NCBI GenBank assembly: GCA_964036045.1
Contig: OZ038379.1
Span: forward strand, 22,692,001 to 22,756,000
Source: Eutreptiella sp. 'Long Island Sound 2002'
Lineage: Eukaryota; Protista; Euglenida
DNA length: 64,000 nt
Direction of reading: 5' to 3'
Shown: positions 31,090 to 49,219 of the stretch, one piece after another
Layout: the number at the start of each line of letters is the position of its first letter
How positions within the stretch are numbered: the first letter of the stretch is position 1
Made by a program: the position numbers and the translations under genes
The notes under the pieces: model-generated
Databases searched by the model: none
What the model saw: the letters and a program-made list of their open reading frames with translations, nothing else
What the model was told of the DNA's origin: nothing

Positions 31090-32463
31090 TCACGCTCTGG
31101 ACACCCCGTTCTCGGCATGTCCGGTACGTGCACCAGCTGTGGGGCTGTGGACCAGGGCCGTGGTGGAGGAGGAGGCAACGTCGGAGGATTCAAAGGGGAG
31201 GAACAACAGCGACGAATTGCTGGACGGGGGAACCGGTGAGGCGTGCGACCCCGCCTTGGGGGACCCCGCCTTGGACCCCGCCTTGGTCCAGGTGTTGGTT
31301 TTCGTGCGGTTGGGCATGTGGACGTTGTGGATGTTTGAGAGGCTCTTCCGGATCTTCGGCGACCGCACGTGGGCCTTGTCGGGACCGCCGAAAGGAATGG
31401 GCGTGTTCGGCAGGTCCGCAGCATCGGGCACCACTGGGGCCAGCGCAGCGCGGCGGGCTGCGGTGGTCTTCAGCCCCGCGTGGGGGCTGTCGTCCCCGAA
31501 GCCCCCCCCCACGGCATTGTGCGACCCCTGCAGAGAGTCGAAGAGCTCGCAAATGCCCTCGGGGAGCTTGGCCTGGAAGTCCGTCAGGTCGGTGGTGGCG
31601 CACCGCTGCAGCTTCTTGGGGCTGCCGGGGGCCTCAGCCACGAAGTAGGTCTGGAGCTTGCCCTTGCCCTTCACGTCCACAAGGCCCCTCGGCGTGAACG
31701 GCACGTCGTCCTTCAGCAGACTGTAGAGCTCGGAGCTGACGTGGGTCTTCCCGGGCTGCCCCGTGGTCTCCATGCGGGAGGCCACGTTGACGGTGTCCCC
31801 CCAGATGTCGTAGCAGAACTTGGTCTTCCCGATGATGCCCCCCACGACTGGGCCGCAGTGGAGCCCCACGCGCATCTGCAGCTCGTTGTCGTCCAGCGGG
31901 CACTGGGCGCAGATCGCGTGCATGTCTGTGGCGAAGCTGACGCAGCTCTTGGCGGTCTCCTTGTGGGAGAAGTGGTTGGCCGGCCACCCCACGCACATGT
32001 AGCAGTCCCCGATGGTCTTGATCTTCTCGACGCAGTGGTGGAGGCACATCTCGTCGAACTGCCCGAACAGGGAGTCCAGGTACTGCACCAGCTTGACCGG
32101 CCCCGTGGAGGAGGCCAGGGCGGTGAACTCCACGAGGTCCCCGAACATGATCACGGCGAAGGGGTGCTTGCGGCCCGCGAAAGCCGAGAAGTAGTCCCCG
32201 AAGACGGACCCTGAGCGGGACGCGTTCATCCGGGACTGGCTGTCCTCCTCGGAGGTCATGTTGCAGGTGTCGCGGTCCGTGTCTTGCCGGTTTTTGAGGC
32301 TGCGGCTGCTGCTGCAGTTGCTAACCGCCCTCGAGAATTGGAAATCGTCGAGGCGCGTGGGTTGGTCCGCAATCGACTGGAAGAACTCGAAGAGCGCGCC
32401 AGCGATGGCCTCGGGGAAGGAATGGTTGACCAGCTCGTAGGCCAGCTTGCGCTCAATGCCCAG
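31090..32463 (-). CDS. Class III adenylate cyclase, 3' exon (helical linker, catalytic domain, low-complexity C-tail)
   Basis: Acceptor ctgcAG|CTG at 32464/32463 (phase 0). LGIERKLAYELVNHSFPEAIA linker. Catalytic motifs MFGDLVEF, EKIKTIGDCYM, MRVGLHCGPVVGGIIG, YDIWGDTVNVASRMET. Both metal Asp, the Lys/Asp ATP-specifying pair and the Asn/Arg pair are present. Strong GC3 bias; TGA at 31092-31090. Confidence 0.93.
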   Translation of the reverse strand: MGIERKLAYELVNHSFPEAIAGALFEFFQSIADQPTRLDDFQFSRAVSNCSSSRSLKNRQDTDRDTCNMTSEEDSQSRMNASRSGSVFGDYFSAFAGRKHPFAVIMFGDLVEFTALASSTGPVKLVQYLDSLFGQFDEMCLHHCVEKIKTIGDCYMCVGWPANHFSHKETAKSCVSFATDMHAICAQCPLDDNELQMRVGLHCGPVVGGIIGKTKFCYDIWGDTVNVASRMETTGQPGKTHVSSELYSLLKDDVPFTPRGLVDVKGKGKLQTYFVAEAPGSPKKLQRCATTDLTDFQAKLPEGICELFDSLQGSHNAVGGGFGDDSPHAGLKTTAARRAALAPVVPDAADLPNTPIPFGGPDKAHVRSPKIRKSLSNIHNVHMPNRTKTNTWTKAGSKAGSPKAGSHASPVPPSSNSSLLFLPFESSDVASSSTTALVHSPTAGARTGHAENGVSRA

Positions 32464-33879
32464 CTGCAGACGGTCGCAGCGTGTGCACCCCATGCACACC
32501 GTCCACCGCACTCCACAATAGTCCGCCACACACCGGTACACCTACGCCTGCACACCTCTCTGTACCACACCACGCAACACGCCACACGCCACACGCCAAG
32601 CCACACCACCCGACCCGACCCCACCCCACCCCCAGGATGGGTCCTCCAGGAATCTACCCTCAGGCTGCCCCCAACAGAGGCTGCTACAGCACTACAGGTA
32701 TAAAGTGTAGGTGTCCTGGGGACAGGGCAGTGCCAAGCACGTCCTGAGGACCTCCAGCAACGCCCGCGCACCTGGGAGCATGGGAGCAAAGCCTAGAGGG
32801 CCACTACGAATGACCGGGGTTTGTCAAAGCGTGCCCTTGGCCAGCTTGCCCTTCCTGGCACCCAGCCCATGGCCTATAGAGGCGTAGTAGGGAGGCAACA
32901 CAACGCCCGCCGGCGGCTGGAGCTCGTAGGCTTCCCGACCCATTGTCCCCTGGTGGCCTCAGCGTTGGGCTCCGCTGCCCCACCGCTAAGGCCCGGAGCA
33001 CTGGGCACACAAAAACGCAGCAGCAAGCAATTGTGGAGCAAGCAGGTGCCCCCCCCCCCCCCCAGGCCAGACGGATGGACAAATAGGCACAGGGTGGTAT
33101 CTCCGCTGACTAGCTCTGGGGACTGTCAACAGTCCAGTGGGCCTTGAGACCGGACATTCGGGCGAGTCAAGTGGTGTCCGGCGTGTGGGTGCGGGTGCAA
33201 GTGCAGGGCGCGGGGTGGGGCGGCGTGGGGCTGGTGAGTGTGGGATGTGTTGGGTTGGGTTGGGACAGGGCCTCCCTCGTGCAGGAGCAGGGTCTCAGGC
33301 CTGGGCTTCCTTCCCTGCCCAGCCACAAAGCTGAACAACCTGACTGTCCGGTTCCAAGGCTGAGCGGACTATGGACAGCCTCCAGACCTCACCGGAGCGC
33401 TGGTGAGCCGGAGACACCATTGTCTTGTGTGCATGCATACACTCGGGGAAGGGGGGACCACCTGCACAGGGAACCATTGCCCTGCTCCCCTGGAGTATTA
33501 GCGACATGGTGGACCCAAGGCATGACAGGTCTCACGGGCAAGCCATGCTTGGCCCAAATGCAGGGCCCACACGCCTAAGCCCAGCTGGTGCACCATGTCT
33601 CATTCACCTGCATTCCTCACTTGCTTGCTAGGCTGTTGTTGTGTCATGCATGTGTGGGGCTTGTGGGAGGGCGGGAAGGTGGCGGGAAGGGTCCTTGCGC
33701 GTGGGGGCTAAGTGTGGTCTCGTGCTCTAGGCCCGGTGGGGAGGCTTGGGAGCCTAACGCTGAGCCAACCGAGGAGACGTGGGCCAGGGTATCACAACCT
33801 CCAAGTCAAAGGGACATGCTGCAGGGCAACCCCACGACTGCGATCGCACGGGGGCAGTGGGTCTTCTTCTGTACACTGC

Positions 33880-34100
33880 AGCACCGCAGCCCCCACCGCA
33901 GCCCCCACTGCCCACTGCCAACGGCGGTGTGGCAGTGAGCAGAAGGAGACACCACTGCCCACAGCCCACAGCAGTGGGACAGTGAAGAGACGGAGCCGCC
34001 ACTGAGCACTGCCCACAGCACGGCGGTGGTGCACAAAAGGAGACGCCACTGCCCACAGTGCGCAGCCCTGTGGTGGTGTACAGAGGGAGGCGCCACAGCC
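33880..34100. repeat. Degenerate ~55-60-bp tandem repeat
   Basis: Recurrent CGGCGGTG...GGAGACGCCACTGCCCACAG-like units. Confidence 0.55.
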
Positions 34101-34605
34101 CGCGACCGATGGCGCTCATCAAGGCCCGCGTAGGGCCAGGAGGCACCATGGCGTGGGGGGTGCAGACTCCCTCCACAGAGGAAAAGGGGAAGGCACAGCA
34201 CAGGTGCAGCCGCCAAGGGGGCCCAGAGCAGCCAGTCTGGTGCATGGGCCGCCGCCACAGTAAAACACAGGCCACCCCTCCCCCCAGCGGAATCGGCCCA
34301 CCACCCCCAGAAGACAGCCGACACCGAGTCACAAGGGGCCTGCATGGGACCCGCAGCCGCCTACCCACAGCAAGACAGTGGGCACCCATCAGGCAGGGCA
34401 TACAATTAGCTTTAGGGATAAGGATCAGGGCCCACCCGTTTTGCATTTTCCCATGTGCAAAACACCCCGGCCTTTGCCAGGCTGGCCACAGCGCCTTCGG
34501 CATTCCTTACCACACCACACCACACCACACCACACCACACCACACCACACCACACCACACCACACCACACCACACCACACCACACCACACCACACCACAC
34601 CACAC
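34058..34605 (+). mobile_element. 3' fragment of a diverged relative of LINE family B with (CACAC)n tail
   Basis: ALIKARVGPGGTMAWGVQ versus family B TLLKARLGPGSTMAWALQ; same terminal motif CAGCGCCTTCGGCA (34489-34502); tail about 34509-34605. Confidence 0.75.
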
Positions 34606-35023
34606 CGGAGTTCCTCCGCCACGTCGTGGAGGAGTCCATACGGGTCTGGTACGCCCACGCCAAGGCGCGTGCCACACTGCTGAAGGCCCGCCTGGGCCCG
34701 GGCAGCACGATGGCGTGGGCGTTGCAGGAGCTGCGCCTACACCAGCAAGCGGAACGGGAGGGAGTGCAGCGGGAGCTCCTGGAATAAGCGCGGTCGCCAA
34801 GGGCGAACCGACCAGGTCTTCCCGACTCCCCCTCTCTCCACCGAGGCCTACACACATACGCACGGCGCGCACACAACACACACAGCCCCGCCCGTTTACC
34901 TGTACCCGTGGGTAGACATCCCGGCCATTGCCTTCTGGTAACAGCGCCTTCGGCACACCACACCACACCACACCACACCACACCACACCACACCACACCA
35001 CACCACACCACACCACACCACAC
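34606..35023 (+). mobile_element. 5'-truncated LINE family B copy flanked on both sides by (CACAC)n
   Basis: 34606-34954 closely matches about 47693-48031 (EFLRHVVEESIR...QRELLE* plus 3' UTR); coding differences appear mostly synonymous; tail 34955-35023. Confidence 0.93.
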
Positions 35024-36670
35024 CCTGAGTACTCCCCAGCTCTACCCATGGGCTGGGTGCCGGGTGCGAAGCCCCGGACGACAGGGCCCGGGCACTGCCA
35101 ATAGGCGGTGTACTAACAGTGTCGGGTGCGCGCACGTCCCAGTGCCAAGCACCATCCCCAGGGACCCCGCGGCCCCTAGTACCGGCCGCCTTGGCCCTGG
35201 GAACGGTCAGCGACCCCCCGTAGAGGACGGCTGACCTAGCCTCCCCCTCCTCTCTTCCCCTACGCGCCCGCCCACGCACCGGGCCCAAACCGAAGCCTAG
35301 ACACGCGCCCCTCCTGGCGCTCCTGCCCCAGCCCCCCCCACGGCCGCCCCTCCGCATGCCCCGTCGGCCCCTCCCCCCTGTGCTGCCTCCTCTCCTCGCC
35401 CCCTGCTGCCTCACCCATCCCAAAACCCTCCCTGACCCTACTCCTCTTGCAGGCTGGCAGCGCCTGAGCGGCGCGCCCCCAGGGCCCCGCATCGGCGGCC
35501 GGCCGCGTGAGGGTATCAGCCACACCGAGGAGGCCCCTATACGGGGGCTTCAATGGCGCAGCAGGGTCAACAGGGGTATGATGGGTGTGTGAGTGGGTGT
35601 GAGTTTAAGAGAGACTACGGGACCCCCACGGGACGGCCTGCGCCGGGGCCAGTATTTTCCTGTTCTGGTTTTGTTTGTTCCTGTTCTTTCCTCCTTGTTA
35701 TTTGCGCAACTGCCTGTAGGGGTGCAAGCCTCATGCAGGAGCCTCCGGGCCTGTTGGCGCCTTCCCTTCGGGTTTTTTCTTCTTTTGTTGTAGGCTGAGT
35801 GAGCAGAGCGGCACCGCAGTGCCTGAAAGGCCCGTGGCCCGGACATGCGCGGGGGGCCTCAACAACGACCCCCCGCCCTGCAATATCCGCCTTCGGAAGA
35901 CTGCCTGTGAACAGCAGGCGGAACAGTGCCGGAAGGGCAGTGTGGCCCCGCTAGTGATGGCGGTTCGAAGCCACGCTGCCCCTGTATGCTCGTGGCCCGA
36001 CGGCCGGTGGTTTGACACGGGGACAGGTGGTTAAAGTACTGAAGGAAATTGATTGCCCGATGACCAATGTGGAAGAAACAGTCCCTGTCCCCGTCCGGCT
36101 GGACGCCCCGGTATCGGTATCCAACATCCTTTGAGGTACGGTATAAGGCCCCCCGGCCACCACCCCGGCGCCAACACCAGGGAGGGCGTCCGGGAGGGGT
36201 AACAGCCCCCGATCCCCCAAAGGCAGCCCCAAAGGTGTGCGCACCACTGGAGGGGCATGTCTGCGGGGTAAACCAAAGCGCTGAGTAAAACCCTAATGTA
36301 ATGATTAGTGCCTACTGCCGTAAATAATGCTTAAACGGGTAACATGGCCCGCGCCCGGTGCCAGTTTTAGTGCGCAGCCCCAAGAGCCGGACCCGACCGG
36401 CCGTACTGAGGCGAGCCCGGCAATGGGTATGGCAGGCCGGACTTTAAGTGCTGGTAGCCACGCCTCAGTACACTCCGTGGGCTAATAAGGCCCACGGGGG
36501 GGCCAAACACCGTTACGTTCGGGAGTTAAGCCCCGGCGGTGTTTGGGTTTGTTCCTGGTTAAGAGGACTCACGTTGAGTCCCAGATACTGTTACCCCGGG
36601 GTTATGACTCCCGGTACTGCCTGCTTACTTGCCTGCTGCCGCTAAGAGGTAGGAGGGAATACCCACGGGT

Positions 36671-37962
36671 CCTGCAAGAGGCTCCGAACACCCCGTGAAG
36701 GGGACTCCCTATCCCCCCCAGGCCGGTGCGCCCGGTTCTCAGCAGAAGATGGCCCCCCATTGGCCTGGCAGGAGGCTCCGAACACCCCCTGGGCAGGACT
36801 CCCCGTCCCCCCCGGGCCGGTGCGCCCGGTTCTCTGAAGAAGATGGCCCCCCATTGGCCTGGCAGGAGGCTCCGAACACCCCCTGGGCAGGACTCCCCGT
36901 CCCCCCCGGGCCGGTGCGCCCGGTTCTCTGAAGAAGATGGCCCCCCATTGGCCTGGCAAGAGGCTCCGAACACCCCCTGGGCAGGACTCCCCGTCCCCCC
37001 CGGGCCGGTGCGCCCGGTTCTCTAAAGAAGATGGCCCCCCATTGGCCTGGCAGGAGGCTCCGAACACCCCCTGGGCAGGACTCCCCGTCCCCCCCGGGCC
37101 GGTGCGCCCGGTTCTCTGAAGAAGATGGCCCCCCATTGGCCTGGCAAGAGGCTCCGAACACCCCCTGGGCAGGACTCCCCGTCCCCCCCGGGCCGGTGCG
37201 CCCGGTTCTCTGAAGAAGATGGCCCCCCATTGGCCTGGCAGGAGGCTCCGAACACCCCCTGGGCAGGACTCCCCGTCCCCCCCGGGCCGGTGCGCCCGGT
37301 TCTCTGAAGAAGATGGCCCCCCATTGGCCTGGCAGGAGGCTCCGAACACCCCCTGGGCAGGACTCCCCGTCCCCCCCGGGCCGGTGCGCCCGGTTCTCTG
37401 AAGAAGATGGCCCCCCATTGGCCTGGCAGGAGGCTCCGAACACCCCCTGGGCAGGACTCCCCGTCCCCCCCAGGCCGGTGCGCCCGGTTCTCTGAAGAAG
37501 ATGGCCCCCCATTGGCCTGGCAGGAGGCTCCGAACACCCCCTGGGCAGGACTCCCCGTCCCCCCCGGGCCGGTGCGCCCGGTTCTCTGAAGAAGATGGCC
37601 CCCCATTGGCCTGGCAGGAGGCTCCGAACACCCCCTGGGCAGGACTCCCCGTCCCCCCCGGGCCGGTGCGCCCGGTTCTCTAAAGAAGATGGCCCCCCAT
37701 TGGCCTGGCAGGAGGCTCCGAACACCCCCTGGGCAGGACTCCCCGTCCCCCCCAGGCCGGTGCGCCCGGTTCTCTGAGGAAGGTGGCCCCCCATTGGCCT
37801 GGCAGGAGGCTTCGAACACCCCCTGGGCAGGACTCCCCGTCCCCCCCGGGCCGGTGCGCCCGGTTCTCTGACAACGGCGGCCTCCCATAGGCCTGGCGGG
37901 AGGCTCCGAACACCCCCTGGGCAGGACTCCCCGTCCCCCCCAGCCAGGTGCGCCCGGCCTCA
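36671..37962 (+). repeat. 94-bp tandem repeat, ~14 near-identical copies plus ~2 degenerate copies to ~38150, in the putative 5' UTR of LINE B
   Basis: Identical short ORFs start every 94 bp (36937, 37031, 37125 ... 37689); unit CCTGGCAGGAGGCTCCGAACACCCCCTGGGCAGGACTCCCCG...AAGATGGCCCCCCATTGG. Confidence 0.97.
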
Positions 37963-38425
37963 GGGGAAACAATGGCTCCCCACGAGCCTAGCGGAGGGCT
38001 CTAACCACCCCTTGGGCTGGACTCCCCGCCCCCCCAGGCTGGTCTGTAGAGGGTGACAGCCCCCCCACGGGCCTGGCAGGATGCCCCGAACACCCCACTG
38101 GGCTGAGCACCCCCCTGCTCCCCCCGGCCGGGAGTGCCCGGTGGACGTGGAGGCGCAACCCCCCGGCAACAGATCTCCCCCCCCCCGGACCCAGGTGCCC
38201 CAGTGTGCGAGGCAGCAGCCAACGAGTAGCGCGCAGGGGCGCGTTTCCGGATAGATTCTAGTGTACGGGCCCGTAAGGCCGGCCGCCGTAGGCCACCAAC
38301 GCGCGAGCGAGAGCAGGTTCCGGCGCCTGAGCACTGGGCGACCCGGAGGAAGGGATACGCAGTGCCCATGCATGGGCTTCCGGCCTGCGACTCCCTGCTC
38401 TTGCTCTGCAGCCCAGTGACACAAC

Positions 38426-41400
38426 ATGTTCCCGTCGACGCCCGCAACTCCTTACATGCAGCGCCCTCCTGTCCCCGGAGGCCCGCCTGCACCACACCCC
38501 GCGGGGTCCCCGGCTTTTGCCGCCCCCCCCCTCCCCCACTATACCCACACCCCATACGCGCCCCACCAACCGCTCGTGGAGGTTCACTCCCAGCCAGCGT
38601 ACCCCGCCTATTACCTGCGGGAGCCGCGGTATGGGCTTCCCCCGCCCCCCCGCCCGCCCTCGCCGCTCCCGACGGTACCGCCCCCGGACCACCGTGACCT
38701 GGAGTTGGCCTACCTACGGGGCCACGTGGCAGGCCTGGACCGCCGCACCGAGGGGCCTCCGCCCCCTAAGGAGGCGGCGCAGAGGGCGCCCCCGGCGCCG
38801 CAGGGCCCTGCCCCCGACGCGGTCGGCGAGGCGACGCCGGCACTGCTGCTGGCACCGGCGAGGGAGACGGAGCCCAGGCAGGACCGCCGGCCCCCGGCAC
38901 CTACGGAGCCGCCACGCCGGCCCCAATGCGCAACCTACCGGAGGTCCCGCTCCCCCAGACGGGACCTACGCGACGATCGCCGAGACCACGGCCGTACAAG
39001 CCCCGGTAGAGGAGGCCGCACGGCCCACCGCCGGCCCTACCGCTCCCCTGAGCGGTACTACCAGCGCCGGTCCGAGGAGCGCCCCTCCGGACACCGAGCT
39101 CCCGCCGCTAGAGGTAGAGACCATACCCCCGACCGCCGGGATAACCGCTCCCGTCGTGACCCGCCCGGATCAGCCCCCGGCCCGGGCCGGGAGCGACGAG
39201 ACCCCGACGACCGGCGCCGGTACCGCTCCCCCAGCCCGGATACCGCTAGACGCCTGAGGTATGATGCGCCAGATACGGGGCGCCGGCCGCAGTGGGAGCC
39301 CCGTACGGCTCCCGACGCCCAACCCCCGCATGTCCCGAGGGACAAGCCCCCACGCAAGCGGCAGCGCCATAACAAGGAAGGCAGACAGCCTGCGGCGCAG
39401 TCGCCCGCGGGCACCCTGCACAGGCTACCGGTGCACGCTCTGGCGGGGACCCAAACGACGCCGGGCCTCCTGGCCCCCCGTGCACAGCAGGCACGACTGC
39501 CACAGGACGGCGCCCCCCGCACGCCCCAGAAGCACCGTACCGGTGTCACGCAAACCACCCCGGGCCTCCGGGGCCCGGGCTACGCCTCCCCGAGCGGGGC
39601 AATGAAAGCCCCCCAGCTGCCCCGCGCCGCGGACCCTCCGACCGTCCTGCACATCCGGCGCCTCCCCACAGGGTGGTCCCGCCATCACCTGGCGGACCGT
39701 TTCATGTGGCTGGATGGGGCGGAGGGGGTGGCGGAGGCCTTTTATGGAGGAGAAAACCACGGGTACCTGACCTTCCGCGCCCACACACAGGCGCTGGCGG
39801 CGTGTGCGGTAGTCAGCGCTGCCCTGGGTACGGTAGCGCCCCCGCCCGGCCGCCTGCCGGCGGCAGTCCACTGTGTCAACCGCAGTGTCATCCGGGACCT
39901 CACCGTGCACACACAGCGGGACGCCGCGGGCGAGGAGCGGCACGACACGCCGTCCGCCGGGGCTGCCCCCCCGCGCATGGACCGCCCCTCCCTCACCGAG
40001 GATGACGTCCGGCGCCTCATAGCCGATGCCGTGGGCGGAACGCAGCAGGTGGTACATCCAACATCCACGGCCGCAGGAGCCCGCCCGGGCGCCCACAGCC
40101 GACGCGGTCGGTGGCGCCGGCCGCCCCCTACCCCGAGGCCCCCCTCCGGCACAACAGGCGCCCATCTCCCGGGAAAGAGACCCAGCGTTGCCCGGGGGCG
40201 GGGCAGCCCCTGAGCGAAGCCCGGAGGTCACCGCGGCTCGGGTGAGCCCGCCTGCGCGGCCGCGAGCCGCAGCCAAAGGCCGTACCAGCCAGCTTAGCCG
40301 GCGTATCCTGGCGGCTACCGGGACGCCTAGTGACCCCGGCCTACCGGCTGCCGGGCATGCCAGCGCAGGGCCCCCCCGGCCCGGCCCCTCGGATGTGGCA
40401 ACTGAAGGCGTGTCCCAGGACCTCTTGGGCGCAGATTGCCGGGAGGAGGGCCATCAGCAAGCCCTCGCCAGCGCCCCAGAGGCCCCTGCGGCCCGCCCCC
40501 AGGCGCCCGCTGGCAACCCCATGACCGCCCAGGCCCACGACGGTGCTGAGGCCTCAGCTCCCCCGACGGGGGGCCACCCCCCGGAGGGACCCGCCCTGGA
40601 TTGGTGTACAGTCTGTCGCTTCTGGCGCCCCAGCCCATGCGACCAGTGCCCCCCGCAGAGAGCCCCCCAGGAGGAAGACGAGGCTGCGGAGCTGGCCCCG
40701 GAAGGAGAACGGGAGCTAGGGCCCCGTGAGACCTCGCCCGCACTCGAAACTCCCACTTCGCACGCGGCGGATGACCCTCCGCCCACCCCCATCGATGTGG
40801 ATGCGTCCCAGGGCAGAGCCACCCAGCTGGCTGGCCTCCTGGATGATGAAGCGGGCGCCCTCAGCCCGCTGGAGCCCCTACCGCCGGCGGTAGAGTTGGA
40901 TGGCGACCCTGCACCGCCGGCAGCCGGCCGCGCCGACAGCCCGCCGGGCGAGCTGGGCCCGCACGAGTCCCGCCTGGCGGCGCTCATCGCCGATACTGCC
41001 CTGGAGGAGGCGAACCCCTGCAAGGCCCTGGACGTCGCTGTCTTCCTGGACAGCGAACGCCTGTCGGCGGTGGGACGCCGCATGCGGGCGGCGGGCCAGG
41101 ACACCACCCCCGTCCCCGGCCCCCATTCCCCGGAGGGAGACGGCCTCCCTCCCCTCCTGGCCCAGTATGCAAAGAGGACCCGCGAGCTTCTCCAGCTCGT
41201 GGGCTATACCCTGGGGGTCCCCTCCTTCTCCCTCTCCAGCTGGGAGGGAGATGCCATGCCGGCTCCTCACCCGCCGGGACTTGGGATCACGGTGTATTAC
41301 GTGATCGAGGGGAGGGTGCAGCTCCGCCTCCCCACCCCCGAGGGCGGCTCGCGCCCTGGGTGGTGGCTCCAGGCCATGGCATATGCGTATGCCTGGTCTG

Positions 41401-42025
41401 CCCCACCCCCGCCCCGGGCGGTCCCCCCGGATACCAGGGCCCTGGTGCTGATATGCCAGTGCCCGGTACATGTCCCCCGGGGCACGCCGGCCACCGCCCC
41501 CCCCCCGGTCCAAATCTGCGTCAAGCGCGGGGACCGGTACACCCCAGTCGACACGGCGAGCATGGACCTCGGGGACCACAGGGCCACCCTCACCCCACCC
41601 GGAGGCAACCCCCTGGCCATCGCTACGCCCATGGTGGCCAGGGCCACCTACGACAGGGCTCGGGGGGGACTCGTCATCGTCCCCTCGGCCCTGGGGGCCC
41701 AGCAGCTCCGCGACGCCAACTGGAAGGGATGGAGCGCCTCGTGGGTTAGCTACGCCCGGGCCCTCCAGCCGGCCAAGCCGGTCGGCTTCAAGGTCCTGGG
41801 GGCGCAGGCCCCGGCCCTACGAGACTGGGTGCTCCCCAGGCTCACGGGCGAACGGCCAGCGGGGACTCCCTGACCACGGTGTTTGGCCTCATCGGGCGTG
41901 ACCTGCGGGCAGCCCAGGAGGCAGCTGGCGGCTCGGCCACACACGCCGACCCCCAGGGCGGGCCCACTTCCTCAGAGCCGGACCCGGAGCCGGAGCACCC
42001 CACTCCCTCGCAATCCCAGAATTGA
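38426..42025 (+). pseudogene. LINE B ORF1 (~1190 aa restored): Pro-rich, RS/RD-rich, RRM-like domain, acidic linker, C-terminal globular domain
   Basis: RRSRSPRRDLRDDRR / YRSPER / YRSPSP tracts. RRM-like VLHIRRLP..WSRHHL..RF...HGYLTF (about 39640-39800). Frameshift from a 7-bp duplication at 40054-40067; probable 1-nt deletion in the G-run 41861-41864 (restores GDSLTTVFGLIGRDL... to TGA 42023-42025). Confidence 0.75.
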
Positions 42026-45000
42026 GGGCACCCCGGAGGACGTGCACGCTGTGGGGTACATGTGGCTCAACGTCCGGGGCCGGTACCTCCGGCAACGCCT
42101 CCTGGCGCAAGCCCTGCACATGGCAGCGCGCCGCCCTACCCTCCTCATCCTGGCTGAGGCCCAGTCCCGGGCAGGCCCCGAGGACCCCCCCTTCCAGGAC
42201 TACGCCCGTCACGTCGTGCTCCCCGCCCAAGGCAAGACGGGGGCGGGCCTGGAAGTATACGTCCGCACCGGGACAACCACCCGGGCTTCCCTCCTCTGGG
42301 GCGCGGAGGATGCCAACGCCCTCCTCATGGAGGTCCTCACCCCGTGGGGTCGGCATCATGTGCTGGCAGCCCATGCCCCCCACATCAGCATAGGCGTGGA
42401 GCCTTACGTGAGATGGTGGGCCGCCGTCTGGAGGGAGGTCACCTGCCTGGTCGACCCGACGACCGTCCTGGTTGTCACGGACACCAACTCGGCGGCCCGA
42501 CCGGCAGATAGAGGGACCCCGCGCCCCGAGGACACGGGCTACCGCACGTTCCTGAGGGCCTTCAACCTCAGGGACTTAGTGGACCTTCACCCGGTCCCGC
42601 AGGACACATACTCCTGCTTCCAGGGAGCCGCGCGCTCCCGCATCGACACAGCCGCCTGCCACAGCGAGGCGCAGTTCACCATCGCCTCGTACCACTACTG
42701 GGCGAGCACCCTCCTCTCGGACCACCACGTCCCCCTCCTTCTCACCGTCGCCTTCCCGGTGAACCGGCTGGACAAGCCCAGCCCCCATACGGTCTCCCGC
42801 ACCCCGGAGTACCACCTGGGCCCAGTGGCCCTGTCCCCGGCCGACACGGCCGATTTCCACAACTCAGTACTCCGCAGGAGAGCCGTGGACCCCCAGCTCG
42901 CCCCGAATCGGTGGCTGAAAGGCCTGCAAAGGGCCATCTACGATTGGGCCCACGCCACGGGCAGGGTCCGAGCCCTCCGCTTCCGGCAGTACCGCCTCAA
43001 GACGCGCCCGGCGGAGCGAGCTCCCCCCTCGCGGGCTCCCCAGCAGCCCTTCCCAGCGCGCAGCATGCTCCCCACGGTGGGGCGTTTTACAGTGATGGCC
43101 CAGAGCATATTGGGCACCTCAGTGACGGCGGGGCACGCCCTCAAGCGGAGCCTAGTGGCCTTGGGGGAAGCCCAGCGCCAGCAGAGCCTCCGGGGGGTGA
43201 AACGCAGGGCCCTCCGATGCAAGCAGGAAACCCTCAACTTGAAACGCACCCCGGAGCAGTGGAGGGAGGTGCAGCGTCGTAGCATGGGCCCCCCGCGCGA
43301 TGTCTCGGAAATCCCCCTGGACAGCAAGGCGCTCCTCAACCCCAGGGAGACGTTGTCCGCCCTGTACTTGAGCCGCCTACGGCTCCAGGGCCATAGCTAC
43401 CGGATCCGGGATGACCCCGACCGATGGGCCCACTTCCAGAGGTACCTGGGGCTCCTGCCGCAGCATGCCCCGCCAGCCCGCGGCGACTATGTCCAGCCCC
43501 GCCACCTCTGGGAGGTGCAGTCAGGGAAGGCCCGCGGCCCCGACCTCCGCCTACCCGAAGCGGACGTCTGCATCGATATAGCCTGGTAACGACACCTGAC
43601 GGAGGCGGACCAGAAGACCCTGTGCACCGTGGTGCGCAGCCCCCCAGTCAGCCGCACGGTGGGCAGGCGGGGGCGGGTTACCCTGCTCCTAAAAAACCCG
43701 GACCAGCCGGTCCAGGAGGCGAACCTCCGGGGGATAACCATCTCCTCCCACGTCTCCAAACTCGAGCCCACGGCCTTCTATGCCGTGGCGACAGCCGTCT
43801 ACGAGCGGGCCCTGGGGGGCCCCTGCCTAGTGGGGGGCATGCGGGGGATATCCCTCCAGGAGGTCGTCCGCACGGTGCACATGAAGCTGGACCTGGCCAG
43901 GCTTCAAAACCGGATAGTGGACGTCCTGATCACGGATCTCGCGAAATTCTTCGACGTGATCGCGCAGGACATTCACCCTATAGTGGGAGCCCGGGTGGGC
44001 CTGGGAGAGGCCGACCACCTCGCCACCCATACCGAGGGTTTCTCCTACACCCTGCCCTTGGGCCCCTGGCAGTCCCACACCCTGACGCAACTCCTGGGTA
44101 CGCCCCAGGGTACCGTCCAGGGGGTCCATGCGGGGGCGACGGCGGCGCTCCCTTTCTTGCGATACATGGACATCGCATACCGGTCCTCGGCGGTGGAGCC
44201 CTTCCGCTTCCCGGGACTCATGTGGGTGGACGACACGATCGTCCTCTTGGAGCGGGGCGATTCCCACCCCATACAGGGGGTCCTATTGGATCAGCGGGTA
44301 TACTACCAGGGAATCCTGCGGGTGGACGTCCCTGACCGCAAGATCCAGCACGGCTCCACGTCAGACCCGCGGCCCCTACGGTCGCCTACGCCAGCAGCCG
44401 TGGCCCGCCACCTAGGCCGCGCGTGGGTGACGAGTACCCCGGACCAGCGGCGGGAGGCACTGGCAGGGGCCCCGGAGATACAGCCCTCCAGGGTCCTCCG
44501 ATATATGGGAACCGACATTTACCTCCAGGGGGCGCCTACGGCCCCCCGCAACCTGCCGGAGGTCAGGGCGGAGCTCTGGACACAGCTCCGCCCCCAGCGG
44601 CTCTCCCCGGACGCGGCCATGATGGTACTCATGGCCAAGCTCCCGAGCAAGCTGCTCCCCCTGGCCAGCGTGTACCGCCCCACGGCCAAGGTACACGCGG
44701 CAAACGATGCTCTCATGGTGCGAGCATACAAGCACGTGACGGGCATCTCCCGCCACGCTCATACCGACGCGCTCTGGGGACCCTGGGAGCATGGGTGCCA
44801 GGGTCTCACTCGGTCGGAGCACTCGTGGCAGGCGGCGGTAGTTCGAGAGTGGGTTCGGCAGGGGGCCTGGGCCAAGCAGGAGTTCCGGGACTCCCAGGCC
44901 TACTCCCTGCAAACGCACCAGGCGCTCAGGGGGGGCTGCCCGGCGGTGCTTACCCCGGGGCAGTACACGCATCACCCCAAGTGCCCCCACCTCATAGCCA

Positions 45001-46654
45001 CGCTGCAGCGGGTCGTGGATGAGGTGGCTCTGCCCATGTGGATGCCGGGCCAGTGCTCAGGGACCACCCCCATCCTGGTCCGAGGTCCCGGTGGGCCGCG
45101 ATCGGCGGCAGCGGCGGCCCCTGCCCCCCGGGTGGAGGTGTACACGACTCTGTATGGCGCCGTCGCGCAGGTCGTCGTCCCCCCGACGGTGTACGAAACG
45201 GTACAGGCCCTGGGCTACCATCACCTCGGCGACCTCTACACAGAGAATCACCAGGTGCTACCGGAGCGAGCCCTGAAGAGACGAGCGCCAGCCCGCAAGG
45301 GGATCCCGGGGCTACGTGCATGGCTGGCCCGCCACGCTGCGGTACTAGTCCCGCTCCTGAGGGAACCCACGCCGCGATGGCAAGCGGCACCCAAGGACTG
45401 GGTCCCGGGGGCCGTGCCCACCTATCAGGCGGAAGTCATAGTGGGGGGCCGGGCGGCCAAAACCACCCGAATGGAGACGATATACCATAGGGGGCAGCCC
45501 CTCCGGATAACCGCGGCCCTGCAGGACACCATGGAGACCGCGGGCTGGGCGCCAGAACCCCGGGTATGCCAGCAGCCCCCGGGCACCCTGCCCAGCGACA
45601 CCAGGCTCCACCGCCTCCTGGTGGCCCTCCTGGATATCCAAGTGCAGGTGAATGCGCCACTGCACGCCCAGCTGTGGGGCGACCACCGGCAGGAGTCCCT
45701 GGCCCAGCTCCAGCGCACTGGGGTCAGGGCGCCCACCGTCGTGTGGACGACAGCCCCCCCGTCTGCCGCCTACTGGAACTGGGCCAGCACATCGCAGGCC
45801 CCTCTCGTGACGGTCACCTCGACGCTACCGCCGTTTCCGTGGATCGCCATAGCCCCGGCGGCGGTGGCGCGCTTCCAATATCCAGCGGAGTGCATGGCGC
45901 ACAAATGCCCGGGGCACCCGCACAAGGGGCCCCTCTATTACTCCCTCGATACGGTGGGGTCAGTGCCAGCGGAGCTTCACCAGGCCCTGCGCACCCACCT
46001 CAGGGAGCACCATGGGGACATGGCCCTCCTGGCGCCACACGGCCGGGCGACCAGCCCCCCGCGAGTGTTGGCCCCTGAGACTCGCCCGGGCGTCTGGTTC
46101 CATGACCTGCCTGCGCTGGCGACCCTCCGAGGCAGTGTCGTGGCGGTGGATGCAGGGGCCACGCAGGCGGGTATGGCCATGGCCGGGGTCGTCCAGAGCG
46201 GGCCTGGGGAGTATCAGGCCCAGGTGGCCTCAAGAGTGGGCACCTCCCAGGAGGGGGAGGCGATGGCCCTCCTCTCGTATGCCCGCCGGCTGGCGACACA
46301 GCCGGGGGTTTACTGGCTGGTGCCGGACTCGGAGGCAGCAGTGGGGGCCCTCCGCACGTACTAGGAAGGAGGGCACTGCGGAGATGGCATTAACCACCTC
46401 TACGCCACCGTCCTGGGGGGGCAGCGCCTCTCCCCGAGGTCTGCCATCAATGTGGTGACCACACCATCGCACTGGATCACGGACCTCAACGTCCGTGTGG
46501 ACGCAGCGACGCGGGAGCCGCCGGAGGTAGACCTCACGTGGCTCCTTAGGCGCCCCTACTCATTTATCCCCCCAGTGCCCTTCCGCGACCAGTGCCAGCT
46601 CTCCCCGACGGCGCTGAGTGACTGGTTGCAGGACCGGGCCTCCATACCGGCGCA

Positions 46655-47251
46655 CACGGGGGGGCGACTACAACCGGTCTTGATGCGACCCACCCCCCAA
46701 CTATCTTTCAAAACTCGCGGGGGGGGGGGGTCCAGCCGGGGGTCGGGGGGGGGGGGGGGTTCCTCCCGGGGGTCGGGGGGGGGGGTGTTCCTGCCGGGGG
46801 TCGGGAGGGGGGTGTTCCTGCCGGGGGTCGGGGGGGGGGTCTGGCCGGGGGTCGGGGGGGGGGTCTAGCCGGGGGTCATGGGGGTGTCCAGCCAGGGGTG
46901 AGGGGGGGGGGGGTGGTTAGGGTTAGGGTTAAGGTTAGCCCAGGGTTAGCCCTAGGGTTAGGGTTAGGGTTAGGGTTAGGGCTAGGGTTGTGGTTGCTGT
47001 TAGGGCCTGCAGCCCTCCTGTAGCCCTCCTTCCTTATTGTTTTAACACAAATATGATTTCTCTACAAAATTTTGAGTATTTTGAGTATAAACACATAGTA
47101 TGAAGAAAAAAATTGGCGCCTTTGGCGCCAGACAGTTTTCTCTAGAGACACTTGTTGGTGGCCGACCCGGCACCACTATCTTGCAAAACCCGGGGGGGGG
47201 GGGGGCTGGGGGGGGTCGCATACAAGGACCGGGCCCGGCCGCCCCCCCGTG
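46655..47251. mobile_element. 597-bp MITE carrying telomeric (TTAGGG)n-like repeats, inserted in LINE B ORF2
   Basis: Perfect 12-bp TIR CACGGGGGGGCG / CGCCCCCCCGTG, extending imperfectly to about 37 bp; 8-bp TSD CCGGCGCA at 46647-46654 and 47252-47259. Confidence 0.95.
46915..46990 (+). repeat. Interstitial telomere-type (TTAGGG)n tract with variants
   Basis: GGTTAGGGTTAGGGTTAAGGTTAGCCCAGGGTTAGCCCTAGGGTTAGGGTTAGGGTTAGGGTTAGGGCTAGGGTT; preceded by ~21-bp G-rich repeats at 46730-46870. Confidence 0.9.
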
Positions 47252-48093
47252 CCGGCGCAAGCCATCTACGAGGCCCGCTGGGGGGTAAACTTCATGCCAG
47301 GGGGGGGCCTCCCCCTGGACTGGTTCGACCACGACCAGCAGCGCCACATCACGGCGCATCGCATGGACAACGTCCCGACCATGGCCGTCCTAGCCCACCG
47401 TTCCTCCCACCGGGGCACGGTGCTGGATACAACGTGCCTCCTGTGCGGGACACAGCCCGAGACGGCGCCCCACCTGTGGGCCTGCTCGGCTCAATCGCAC
47501 GAGTGGGGGCCAGCCCGCCGGCGCCTCGCAGCGTGGCTCGACCAGAAGGTGGGGCCACGGGCGGCCCCAGTGCGTCACCAGCTGTGGGAACCGACTGTGC
47601 TGGGGCAGTGGGCGGCAGCCCTGCGGACCCCCTCCATGCAGCTGGCCCACCTGGAGTGTACGGGGCCCCACTCGCTGGGCACGGAGTTCCTCCGCCACGT
47701 CGTGGAGGAGTCCATACGGATCTGGTACGCCCACGCCAAGGCGCGTGCCACACTGCTGAAGGCCCGCCTGGGCCCGGGCAGCACGATGGCGTGGGCGTTG
47801 CAGGAGCTACGCCTGCACCAGCAAGCAGAAAGGGAAGGGGTGCAGCGGGAGCTCCTGGAATAAGCGCGGTCGCCAGAGGCGAACTCACCAGGTCTCCCCG
47901 ACTCCCCCTCCCCCTGCCGAGGCCTACACACTTACGCACAGCGCGCACACAACACACACAGCCCAGCCCGTTTACCTGTACCCGTGGGTAGACATCCCGG
48001 CCTTTTGCCTTTTGGTAACAGCGCCTTCGGCACACCACACCACACCACACCACACCACACCACACCACACCACACCACACCACACCACCACAC

Positions 48094-48795
48094 CTTGTGC
48101 GTGAGTTTCATCTGCTTATCCATGGCCTTTGCCAACAGCGTCTTCTGGACCTCGAGCTGCCCCAGCACCATCAGAATGGCAAGGAATGAGACAATGCCGG
48201 GGCAAAGGATGTTCATGCAGGAGAACCCGATGTCCCAGCCACGCGGGAGCGTGGCCCGTTGAGGGGTCAGGAGCTCAGCCCCGACAAAGACCTCGGCGAA
48301 GCTGAACCCCACGAGGACGACAATGAGGAGGACGAGCTGCCACAGGCACTCCCGCAGCCCAGCTCCGGTGGTGCGCAGCAACTGGGGGCCGAGGATGGCC
48401 CACGAAGCCACGGCGCTGCCGCTGCCACTCCCGCCGAACGACCAGTGAATGCCCAGGGCCGTGAATGCGAGGCCATGGCACAATGCGCTGCGAGCCAAGG
48501 GAAGCCGCCGGGTCGTCAGCAAGTACACGGTGCTGAAGAAGCAGACCAGCACCAGCAGCGCCGGGAACAGCGCGGCGAGCTTGACGCCAAAGACCCAGTA
48601 GCACAGCGACCACAGGGTGCCGCATGCACCGCACAGCACGGCAGCGACGAACACCACCAGTTTGGACCGGATCACTTCCAGGTTGTCGTCGGGCTCCGCG
48701 AGCCGGTCCTGCAGCGCGCAGTAACATTGCCAGCATAATCCAGTGTTGCCCTCATCATCGACCACATCGACCACATCATTGTTGACGTGTGCCAT
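48094..48795 (-). CDS. Class III adenylate cyclase, 5' exon (multi-pass membrane anchor, about 6 TM)
   Basis: LAEPDDNLEVIRSK followed by about six hydrophobic helices (LVVFVAAVLCG..., LAALFPALLVLVCFFSTVYLL, ...GIVSFLAILMVL), resembling Rv1625c-type anchors; GC3-rich. Start is uncertain (ATG 48795 or 48846, or an upstream exon). Confidence 0.85.
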
Positions 48796-49219
48796 CTTCC
48801 CAGATGACAATGTCTGATCAACAAGAAACGTGGGGTCCAGATGCATGACTGTGCGTATTGGCAGGGCTGTCCTTGAGGGAGGAAACGGCGTCTCTGCTAC
48901 GCTGTAGTGCAACAGTACGTGGCGGCACGGGACCTGCACCACTGACTAGCGCGCAAATAGGCTGCCGTTTTGCAGCTTATTCAATGACTGGTAAGCGCCG
49001 ACAGTGGGCCTGCAACACGGGGGGGTCGGTGTGAAGGACCCACCCACCCCCTGGGACACGTTGGCCAAACGCACTTTGCGGGGGGGAGGGGGGGGACCTA
49101 ATTAAGGTGAGCTAAGCGAAGGTGTAGGGGAAACCTTCGGTAGACAACTTGTTTAACATAGCCGCCTCCCAGGGGCTACTGGATTGCACTGGATTGCACC
49201 CACTCAAAGACACATGACC

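What the first reader, a model, noticed from the sequence alone, without database searches (positions are those of the whole stretch)
34058..48093. Serial insertion of LINE B relatives into their own (CACAC)n tails
Seen: three head-to-tail units, each ending GCGCCTTCGGC plus (CACAC)n: a diverged fragment (34058-34605), a 5'-truncated B copy (34606-35023) bounded by the pentamer on both sides, and the near-full copy. Established: some APE LINEs (R1-clade Waldo, Mino) target microsatellites. Inference: family B targets the pentamer it also deposits as a tail, so each insertion seeds the next landing site. Its APE has His at the usual catalytic Tyr position (AAHAP versus family A VVYFP).
Basis: partly seen in the sequence, partly recalled or inferred. 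Interest (0 to 1): 0.75.

Follow-up and report, generated by a model that had tools for sequence, protein, structure and literature searches.

The report
Euglena LINE that lands in CACAN repeats
This is a stack of three copies of a jumping gene (a LINE) of a Euglena genome that inserts almost only into CACAC-type five-letter repeats, including those behind earlier copies; the habit is known from insect and fish LINEs and is seen here in a very divergent protist lineage.

Summary
Three co-oriented units end in GCGCCTTCGGC followed by a CCACA/CACAC array (34491-34606, 34944-35024, 48021-48093). They are three separate insertions of different age: median identity to 29 young copies is 99.7% for unit 3 and 93.4% for unit 2, and unit 1 gives no match.

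Targeting is strongly supported genome-wide. Of 698 exact 5' ends, 530 follow an exact CACANCACA, and 30 of 30 inspected 5' ends lie in CA-rich repeats. All 100 of the first-listed 3' ends are followed by CAC.

"Deposits its own tail" is not supported. The repeat after the 3' end matches the repeat before the 5' end: three CACAA pairs and one CACAG/CACTG pair. Insertions in unique DNA carry no pentamer tail, only target duplications that begin CACA. Five of six arbitrary (CACAC)n arrays stand free.

Landing pads persist because each insertion splits an array, or duplicates it through long target duplications (at least 173-220 bp at three loci).

The endonuclease has all six EEP motifs. His sits at motif iii, which is the general superfamily state.

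The host is Euglena. Earlier notes of this scan describe similar repeat-seeking LINEs elsewhere in this genome. This is a new member of a known kind.

The parts
33900..34508 (+). Unit 1: an old, short, gene-less relative. It has a 47-bp repeat array (33905-34101) and a diverged B-like 3' region that ends GCGCCTTCGGC at 34491-34501.
   Evidence: 5' boundary shared by genomic copies at 71-85% identity; no BLAST match to young copies.
34509..34606 (+). Perfect (CCACA)19.6 array between unit 1 and unit 2.
   Evidence: (100% matches).
34607..34953 (+). Unit 2: a 5'-truncated copy of family B (element positions 47683-48030), from an older subfamily.
   Evidence: alignment; median 93.4% identity to 29 young copies.
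34954..35024 (+). Perfect (CACAC)14.2 array between unit 2 and unit 3.
35025..48030 (+). Unit 3: a full-length but dead family B LINE, about 12.4 kb without its foreign insertion.
   Evidence: The 5' 21-mer is shared by 698 copies. Identity to other copies is 99.7%. Stops and the insertion.
36674..38043 (+). 94-bp tandem array (14.6 copies) inside the 3.4-kb 5' region of unit 3.
   Evidence: Element length varies from 11.3 to 12.3 kb between copies (coordinates).
38420..40210 (+). Open frame of 597 codons, rich in Pro and Arg; putative ORF1.
   Evidence: No Pfam hit. Its function is inferred from position only.
40023..46865 (+). ORF2 frame of about 2280 codons, broken by three stops at 41871, 43587 and 46362.
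42036..42776 (+). EEP/APE-type endonuclease domain with motifs N12, E41, H113, D149-x-N151, D204 and D229-H230.
   Evidence: motifs conserved in relatives. (ESM Atlas 0.96 to Exo_endo_phos clusters). Pfam and PDB sequence searches were blank. The AlphaFold model failed.
43590..44639 (+). Reverse transcriptase core; MWVDDT at 44220-44237.
   Evidence: (ESM Atlas 0.96, RVT_1 in 26 of 30 hits). Pfam and PDB were blank.
46137..46343 (+). RNase H-like motif series: VDAG, then GEAMALL, then VPDSEAAV.
   Evidence: One search gives the coordinates. This is a motif-level inference only; no tool confirmed it.
46655..47251 (.). Foreign 597-bp insertion with an 8-bp target duplication CCGGCGCA. It is not part of family B.
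   Evidence: Absent from every other copy that covers the site. Duplication shown. G-rich repeats and (GGTTAG)12.7.
47435..47485 (+). C-terminal Cys-His knuckle CLLCGTQPETAPHLWAC. It is out of frame with ORF2 in this copy because of the 597-bp insertion.
47968..48030 (+). Conserved 3' end: a hairpin GUUUACC..GGGUAGAC, a second hairpin, and single-stranded UUCGG.
   Evidence: The first hairpin is kept in 16 of 18 diverged 3' ends with different stem sequences. The gene-less partner shares only the last ~110 bp.
48031..48093 (+). (CACAC)11.6 array and imperfect end after unit 3. It abuts unique DNA, an exon on the opposite strand.

Best explanation
Family B is a young, abundant, very divergent LINE of a Euglena genome, with an endonuclease, a reverse transcriptase, an RNase H-like segment and a Cys-His knuckle. 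It integrates by target-primed reverse transcription at sites whose top strand reads CACA just 3' of the nick.

Shown:
- The element's own sequence ends ...GCGCCTTCGG, and what follows is target DNA.
- Insertion is in one orientation only and overwhelmingly into CACAN pentamer arrays. CACAC is used most; CACAA, CACAT, CACAG and (CA)n are also used.
- The repeat behind an earlier copy is such an array, so copies and gene-less partners pile up head to tail. This happened at least twice in the window, inside an intron of a cyclase gene on the opposite strand.
- The array survives each hit. It is split in two, or duplicated by a long target-site duplication.

Inferred:
- The nicked bottom strand ends ...TGTG-3' and pairs with CACA at or just beyond the RNA 3' end.
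- The reverse transcriptase recognises the conserved 3' hairpins, which would explain the partners that share only the last ~110 bp.
- It is not resolved whether the endonuclease, the RNA-primer pairing, or both set the specificity.
For: 5' junctions:
- 30 of 30 full-length 5' ends lie directly after CA-rich microsatellites.
- Genome-wide, 530 of 698 exact 5' 21-mers follow an exact CACANCACA within 0-4 nt; the reversed-pattern control gives 0.

3' junctions:
- There are 2532 exact 3' ends. All of the first 100 continue with CAC. By my count from that list they are about 57 CACAC, 11 CACAA, 6 CACAT, 3 CACAG, 2 (CA)n, 10 degenerate pentamers and 11 short or unique.

Matched flanks:
- The same repeat type lies on both sides of L043/L004 (CACAG/CACTG), L036/L061, L038/L077 and L039/L078 (CACAA).

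Unique-site insertions:
- Target duplications begin CACA and no pentamer tail is present: L064 (18 bp, with paralogous empty sites L086 and L087), L065 (14 bp), L067 (~16 bp), L070 (~7 bp).

Insertion into an earlier copy's tail, bounded by duplications:
- L002 (at least 220 bp) and L016 (at least 173 bp).

Other support:
- Five of six arbitrary (CACAC)n arrays are free-standing.
- The window units differ in age: 99.7%, 93.4%, and no match.
- The 3' hairpin shows compensatory stem changes.
- Endonuclease and RT assignments.
Against: - Neither enzyme domain is recognised by Pfam or by PDB sequence searches. The AlphaFold model of the endonuclease failed (pLDDT 31). The domain calls therefore rest on motif order, motif spacing and language-model look-alikes.
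- About 11 of the 100 listed 3' junctions are not in a microsatellite, and several of these lie in longer satellites (L065, L067, L068, L069). A looser preference for tandem repeats cannot be excluded.
- CACAC is used about 5 times more often than CACAA, although perfect CACAA arrays are at least as abundant. This could mean that RNA tails copied from the donor's flank, or some added repeat, play a part.
- The 60 fetched loci were the best-scoring matches, not a random sample.
- No true empty allele and no read-level data were available.
Confidence: 0.85

Rival explanations
1. One reading: the element itself synthesises a (CACAC)n tail at each insertion, so most (CACAC)n arrays are its own products and each insertion creates the next landing site from nothing.
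For: - Most tails are CACAC and are perfect arrays.
- CACAC is used about 5 times more often than the equally abundant CACAA.
- 7 to 13 of 30 full-length copies sit just downstream of another B-type 3' end.
Against: - In 4 of 4 non-CACAC copies checked, CACAA or CACAG follows GG directly, with no CACAC unit, and the 5' flank has the same type.
- Unique-site insertions have no tail.
- Five of six sampled (CACAC)n arrays have no B end beside them.
Confidence: 0.12
2. The head-to-tail stacks arise in one step, or by recombination, rather than by repeated insertion. Possible routes are a template jump from the 5' end of one RNA to the tail of another, or unequal crossing-over between tails.
For: - L018 and L030 are identical 5'-truncated units (both start at element position 43982) lying 3480 bp apart.
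- Eight 3' ends lie within 22 kb at C1:80.44-80.46 Mb.
Against: - The window units belong to three families or ages and have different 5' ends.
- L002 and L016 show a new copy inside an older copy's tail, bounded by its own target duplication.
Confidence: 0.08
3. Insertion is random, and only copies that happen to fall in harmless microsatellites persist (passive accumulation).
For: Passive accumulation near CA repeats has been proposed for Drosophila Waldo-A and Waldo-B (PMC3812793).
Against: - Copies are 98.6-100% identical to each other, so there has been little time for purging.
- Orientation is strict and the junction is exact, GG followed by CACA, even in unique DNA.
- The target arrays are under 0.05% of the genome.
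Confidence: 0.03
4. The tandem arrangement in the window is an assembly artefact.
For: Repeat-rich regions with perfect microsatellites are hard to assemble. No reads were available.
Against: - The same architecture recurs at many loci with different flanks, truncation points and target duplications.
- The three units differ in sequence.
Confidence: 0.02

Closest known systems
Waldo (ACAY repeats) and Mino ((AC)n), R1-clade LINEs of insects
   Same: They are APE-type LINEs that insert sequence-specifically and in one orientation into CA-containing microsatellites, so both flanks are the repeat (PMC3812793).
   Different: - The host is a euglenid protist, not an insect.
- The preferred target is a pentamer (CACAC, more loosely CACAN).
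- The enzyme domains are too divergent for Pfam.
- An RNase H-like segment is present; from memory, R1-clade elements lack one.
- Target duplications reach at least 220 bp.
- Membership of the R1 clade could not be tested.
Kibi ((TC)n) and Koshi ((TTC)n) of fish; Dong ((TAA)n)
   Same: The same habit: microsatellite-specific LINEs (PMC3812793).
   Different: Different repeat motifs and different hosts. No detectable sequence relationship.
TRAS1 and SART1 of Bombyx (telomeric (TTAGG)n); from memory
   Same: A five-base repeat as target, strict orientation, an APE-type nuclease that cuts within the repeat, and head-to-tail accumulation in repeat arrays.
   Different: Those are telomere-specific and poly(A)-tailed. 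Family B uses interstitial arrays, including intronic ones, and has no poly(A).
R1 tandem arrays in rDNA, and Zepp of Chlorella (copies inserted into earlier copies); from memory
   Same: Repeated insertion at a site that each insertion regenerates gives head-to-tail stacks.
   Different: Here the regenerated site is a microsatellite that also exists free in the genome. It is not a unique gene site or a poly(A) tail.
Other repeat-seeking LINE families noted by this scan in the same genome (s1-216516, s1-193004, s1-213006, s1-206519)
   Same: The same genome and the same kind of behaviour. s1-216516 describes a (TGTGG)n-tailed LINE with satellite cargo and a gene-less derivative, which fits family B.
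   Different: I could not compare sequences with those notes; the look-up by sequence was blank. The other notes concern (TG)n and (GA)n targets.

Membership tests
APE-type non-LTR retrotransposon (LINE) | An EEP/APE-like endonuclease domain N-terminal to the reverse transcriptase, with catalytic motifs i-vi. | tested here: met
   - Motifs N12, E41, H113, D149-x-N151, D204 and D229-H230 are in canonical order and conserved in relatives.
- ESM Atlas scores 0.96 to Exo_endo_phos clusters.
- The motif list is from PMC12988330.
- Caveat: there is no Pfam or PDB sequence hit, and the fold prediction failed.
APE-type non-LTR retrotransposon (LINE) | A reverse transcriptase with an xxDD palm motif. 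| tested here: inconclusive
   MWVDDT lies at 44220-44237. ESM Atlas scores 0.96 to RVT_1 clusters, 26 of 30 hits. Pfam, PDB phmmer and a 32-sequence profile all found nothing.
APE-type non-LTR retrotransposon (LINE) | Hallmarks of target-primed reverse transcription: a fixed 3' end, variable 5' truncation, target-site duplications and no LTRs. | tested here: met
   The 3' end is constant, and the 5' ends fall at many element positions. Duplications of 7-18 bp and of at least 173-220 bp are seen.
Microsatellite-specific LINEs (functional class: Waldo, Mino, Kibi, Koshi) | Most copies genome-wide are flanked on both sides by the same microsatellite, in one orientation. | tested here: met
   Matched flanks. 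No opposite-orientation case was seen among 30 inspected 5' ends.
Microsatellite-specific LINEs (functional class: Waldo, Mino, Kibi, Koshi) | The target repeat exists before insertion (empty sites). | tested here: met
   - Free arrays L071-L075.
- Duplications that contain repeat plus unique DNA, in L002 and L016.
- Paralogous empty sites for the unique-site insertion L064.
- True allelic empty sites were not available.
R1 clade | Placement within the R1 clade in a reverse transcriptase phylogeny. | not testable with these tools
   No reference LINE reverse transcriptases were alignable. All database relatives are unnamed ENA proteins, and none matched a protein of any named family or taxon.
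LINEs with a 5' HDV-like self-cleaving ribozyme | An HDV-like ribozyme fold at the first ~70 nt. | tested here: not met
   No Rfam match at E up to 10 over 34900-35500, and none at gathering score over 32000-49000. The fold z-score is only -1.8. A divergent ribozyme is not excluded.

The most novel reading that the evidence does not exclude
Family B often makes very widely staggered cuts, 170 to more than 220 bp apart. Each insertion then duplicates the whole landing pad, that is the microsatellite plus adjoining DNA, on both sides of the new copy. If so, the element amplifies its own target arrays and drives the growth of repeat-and-retroelement stacks that fill Euglena introns. It would do this with an endonuclease of the general EEP (His at motif iii) type rather than the Tyr type usual in LINEs.
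Probability: 0.3. Interest if true: 0.6.

Novelty: new member of a known kind. Interest (0 to 1): 0.45.

Why it matters
- It extends microsatellite-specific LINE integration, so far documented in the papers I found for insects, fish and a snail, to a euglenid. The lineage is so divergent that standard domain models miss both enzymes, so such elements would be left unclassified by routine annotation. The published E. gracilis assembly paper reports 32.7% of sequence as unclassified repeats (PMC11252322).
- It gives a clear, testable rule: nick so that CACA lies 3' of the junction. It also offers a natural series of targets (CACAC, CACAA, CACAT, CACAG, (CA)n) for separating nuclease specificity from RNA-primer pairing.
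- It helps explain how some Euglena introns grow into multi-kilobase stacks of co-oriented elements.

Tried and rejected
- Pfam on all long frames and on the excised endonuclease returned nothing.
- PDB sequence searches, with single sequences and with a 32-row profile, returned nothing meaningful.
- The AlphaFold2 model of the endonuclease, built on a 16-row alignment, was unusable (mean pLDDT 30.9), so no fold search was run.
- BLASTP of the family B endonuclease against the family A endonuclease gave no real alignment.
- Word-based and exhaustive protein searches found only unnamed ENA proteins and fragments, with no named or other-taxon relative, so the clade could not be placed.
- Rfam found no ribozyme at the 5' or 3' end. 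This followed leads from earlier notes on HDV-like and twister-like motifs.
- RNAalifold on a MAFFT alignment missed the 3' hairpin because of a register shift. Folding each sequence separately showed it.
Six of eight guessed 3' windows missed the end.
- A second sample of 12 3' ends gave no further informative target duplications, because most belonged to the gene-less partner.
- I did not take the contig for human, and no restricted sequence was involved.
Full report
WHAT IS THERE

The window is G000:C2:22692001-22756000 of a 2.28-Gb genome. The host is therefore a Euglena. The published E. gracilis chromosome assembly has smaller chromosomes (at most 121 Mb; PMC11252322), so this is another assembly or a close relative.

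Between 33.9 and 48.1 kb, three co-oriented units each end in GCGCCTTCGGC followed by a perfect CCACA/CACAC array.

- Unit 3 (35025-48093) starts with CTGAGTACTCCCCAGCTCTAC. This 21-mer occurs 698 times in the genome, so it marks the true 5' end of a roughly 12.4-kb element.
- Unit 2 (34607-35024) is the last ~350 bp of the same family plus its array.
- Unit 1 is a more distant relative. Its genomic copies (71-85% identity) share a 5' boundary near window 33900, so it includes the 47-bp repeats at 33905-34101.

Median identity of the last ~350 bp to 29 young copies is 99.7% for unit 3 and 93.4% for unit 2. Unit 1 gives no match. These are three separate insertions of different age or subfamily, oldest upstream.

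The stack lies antisense in an intron. On the minus strand, an exon at or below 32469 encodes an adenylate/guanylate cyclase catalytic domain (PF00211, E = 3e-18). A long open frame abuts the last array at 48094.

THE ELEMENT

Unit 3 has these parts:
- a 3.4-kb 5' region holding a 94-bp tandem array;
- a 597-codon Pro/Arg-rich frame;
- a roughly 2280-codon frame broken by TGA, TAA and TAG;
- a 597-bp foreign insertion with an 8-bp duplication, absent from other copies.

Pfam sees nothing in any frame, and PDB sequence searches see nothing. Even so, residues 42036-42776 carry the six EEP active-site motifs in canonical order: N12, E41, H113, D149-x-N151, D204 and D229-H230. All are conserved in the relatives that cover them. 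From memory, human L1 endonuclease has N14, E43, Y115, D145, N147, D205 and H230, so the spacing is nearly the same. The ESM Atlas places this segment with Exo_endo_phos clusters at 0.96 and places 43590-44639 with RVT_1 clusters at 0.96. An RNase H-like motif series and a C-terminal Cys-His knuckle follow, at motif level only. The AlphaFold model failed.

However, His is the general residue of EEP motif iii, and Tyr171 is the APE1 speciality (PMC12988330). The site looks intact and DNase I-like, not defective.

TARGETING

All 30 fetched full-length 5' ends are preceded directly by CA-rich microsatellites. Most are CACAC; seven are CACAA; two are CACAG or CACTG; two are (CACG)n/(CA)n. Genome-wide, 530 of the 698 5' ends (76%) follow an exact CACANCACA within 0-4 nt, and the control gives 0. 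In the sample of 30 the same strict pattern caught 23, so the true share in repeats is near 100%.

The 3' 15-mer occurs 2,532 times, and all of the first 100 are followed by CAC. By my count from that list:

| Repeat after the 3' end | Approximate number of 100 |
|---|---|
| CACAC | 57 |
| CACAA | 11 |
| CACAT | 6 |
| CACAG | 3 |
| (CA)n | 2 |
| degenerate pentamers | 10 |
| short or unique | 11 |

Perfect (CACAC)7 gives 54,240 overlapping hits and (CACAA)7 gives 64,800. By my estimate these arrays together cover under 0.05% of the genome. CACAC is also used about five times more often than CACAA, although CACAA is at least as abundant.

IS THE "TAIL" MADE BY THE ELEMENT?

The evidence says mostly not.

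- Where the 5' flank is not CACAC, the 3' repeat is the same type and begins directly after GG. This holds for L043/L004 (CACAG/CACTG) and for L036/L061, L038/L077 and L039/L078 (all CACAA).
- Copies in unique DNA have no pentamer tail. L064 is a 377-bp copy bounded by an 18-bp duplication CACAAAGGCCAAATAGGC. Two 79%-identical paralogous sites carry that stretch once, without the element.
- L065 (14 bp), L067 (~16 bp) and L070 (~7 bp) also have duplications that start CACA.
- Five of the first six (CACAC)n arrays listed on contig 1 stand alone between unique flanks.

So the element ends at ...TTCGG. The first nick falls just 5' of a top-strand CACA, and the array is the target.

SERIAL INSERTION

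In L002 and L016 a new copy sits in the array behind an older B-type 3' end. It is bounded by a duplication of at least 220 bp (L002) or at least 173 bp (L016) that contains part of the array plus the DNA beyond it. L008 shows a duplication of at least 205 bp of the array itself, with the same internal variant on both sides. These loci show directly that earlier copies' tails are reused. They also show that long staggered cuts can copy the landing pad to both sides.

Seven to thirteen of 30 full-length copies lie just downstream of another B-type 3' end. Some arrays of identical truncated units look like local duplication instead (L018 and L030).

PARTNERS AND THE 3' END

Many of the 2,532 3' ends belong to gene-less partners: a long 47-bp satellite array, about 300 bp of other sequence, and only the last ~110 bp of B. 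Others join the satellite to longer 3' parts of B.

Eighteen diverged 3' ends keep a hairpin whose stem sequence changes in a compensating way (GUUUACC/GGGUAGAC, UUUGCAU/AUGCAAG, UUGCU/AGCAA) around a loop ACCCGU. A second hairpin and a constant UUCGG follow. I infer that the reverse transcriptase recognises this end.

COMPARISON AND NOVELTY

Microsatellite-specific APE-type LINEs are known: Waldo, Mino, Kibi and Koshi, with Dong listed alongside them (PMC3812793). I found no paper linking Euglena to such elements. Earlier notes of this scan describe similar families elsewhere in this genome, one of them probably this family (s1-216516). So the scan has found this before on other DNA.

I class it as a new member of a known kind. 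The least ordinary details are the long duplications, the His-type nuclease site, and the extreme divergence of the enzymes.

LIMITS

- Clade placement was impossible: only unnamed ENA proteins matched, and none from a named family or other taxon.
- The fetched loci were best matches, not a random sample.
- No reads or alleles were available.

Noticed in passing
L002, L008, L016 (loci; analysis): Target-site duplications of at least 220, 205 and 173 bp flank 5'-truncated family B copies. They contain microsatellite plus adjoining sequence. Unique-site insertions have only 7-18 bp. This two-sized pattern is unexplained.
   Followed up: partly
window 46655-47251: A 597-bp insertion inside the LINE, with an 8-bp duplication CCGGCGCA. 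It carries G-rich 24-27-bp repeats and (GGTTAG)12.7, and is absent from all other copies that cover the site.
   Followed up: partly
window 47968-48030 and 17 loci listed: A 3'-terminal hairpin whose stem differs between related families through compensating changes while its loop ACCCGU is kept; probably the element's recognition signal for its reverse transcriptase.
   Followed up: partly
L065, L066, L068, L070, L088, L090, L091, L095, L099: An abundant gene-less partner: 1.1-1.7 kb or more of 47-bp satellite, about 300 bp of other sequence, and only the last ~110 bp of family B. It accounts for many of the 2,532 family B-type 3' ends.
   Followed up: partly
window 36674-38043: A 94-bp tandem array (14.6 copies, 94% matches) inside the 5' region of the LINE. 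Full-length copies differ in length by about 1 kb, probably through this array.
   Followed up: no
window 31900-32469 (minus strand) and 48094-48942 (minus strand): The whole 15.6-kb stack lies in an intron of an adenylate/guanylate cyclase gene on the opposite strand (PF00211 exon). On that strand the upstream exon appears to end ...AAG, right against the GTGTGG... of the repeat, so the repeat may supply the splice donor.
   Followed up: partly
whole genome: A 24-nt stretch of the Euglena spliced leader occurs 5,458 times, dispersed over the chromosomes rather than only in tandem gene arrays.
   Followed up: no
G000:C8:51997951-52001861 (L018, L030) and C1:80442913-80464644: Local clusters: two identical 5'-truncated units 3,480 bp apart, and eight family B 3' ends within 22 kb. 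These suggest that tandem duplication acts alongside repeated insertion.
   Followed up: no
window 32640-33080 and 33242-33860: Two further dispersed repeats of unknown kind (71-82% identity to many genomic copies) lie between the cyclase exon and unit 1. A degenerate CA-rich microsatellite lies at 32560-32630.
   Followed up: no
L065, L067, L068, L069 3' flanks: Several insertions that are not in a microsatellite lie in ~57-65-bp satellites whose units contain CACAC. This hints at a wider liking for tandem repeats.
   Followed up: no
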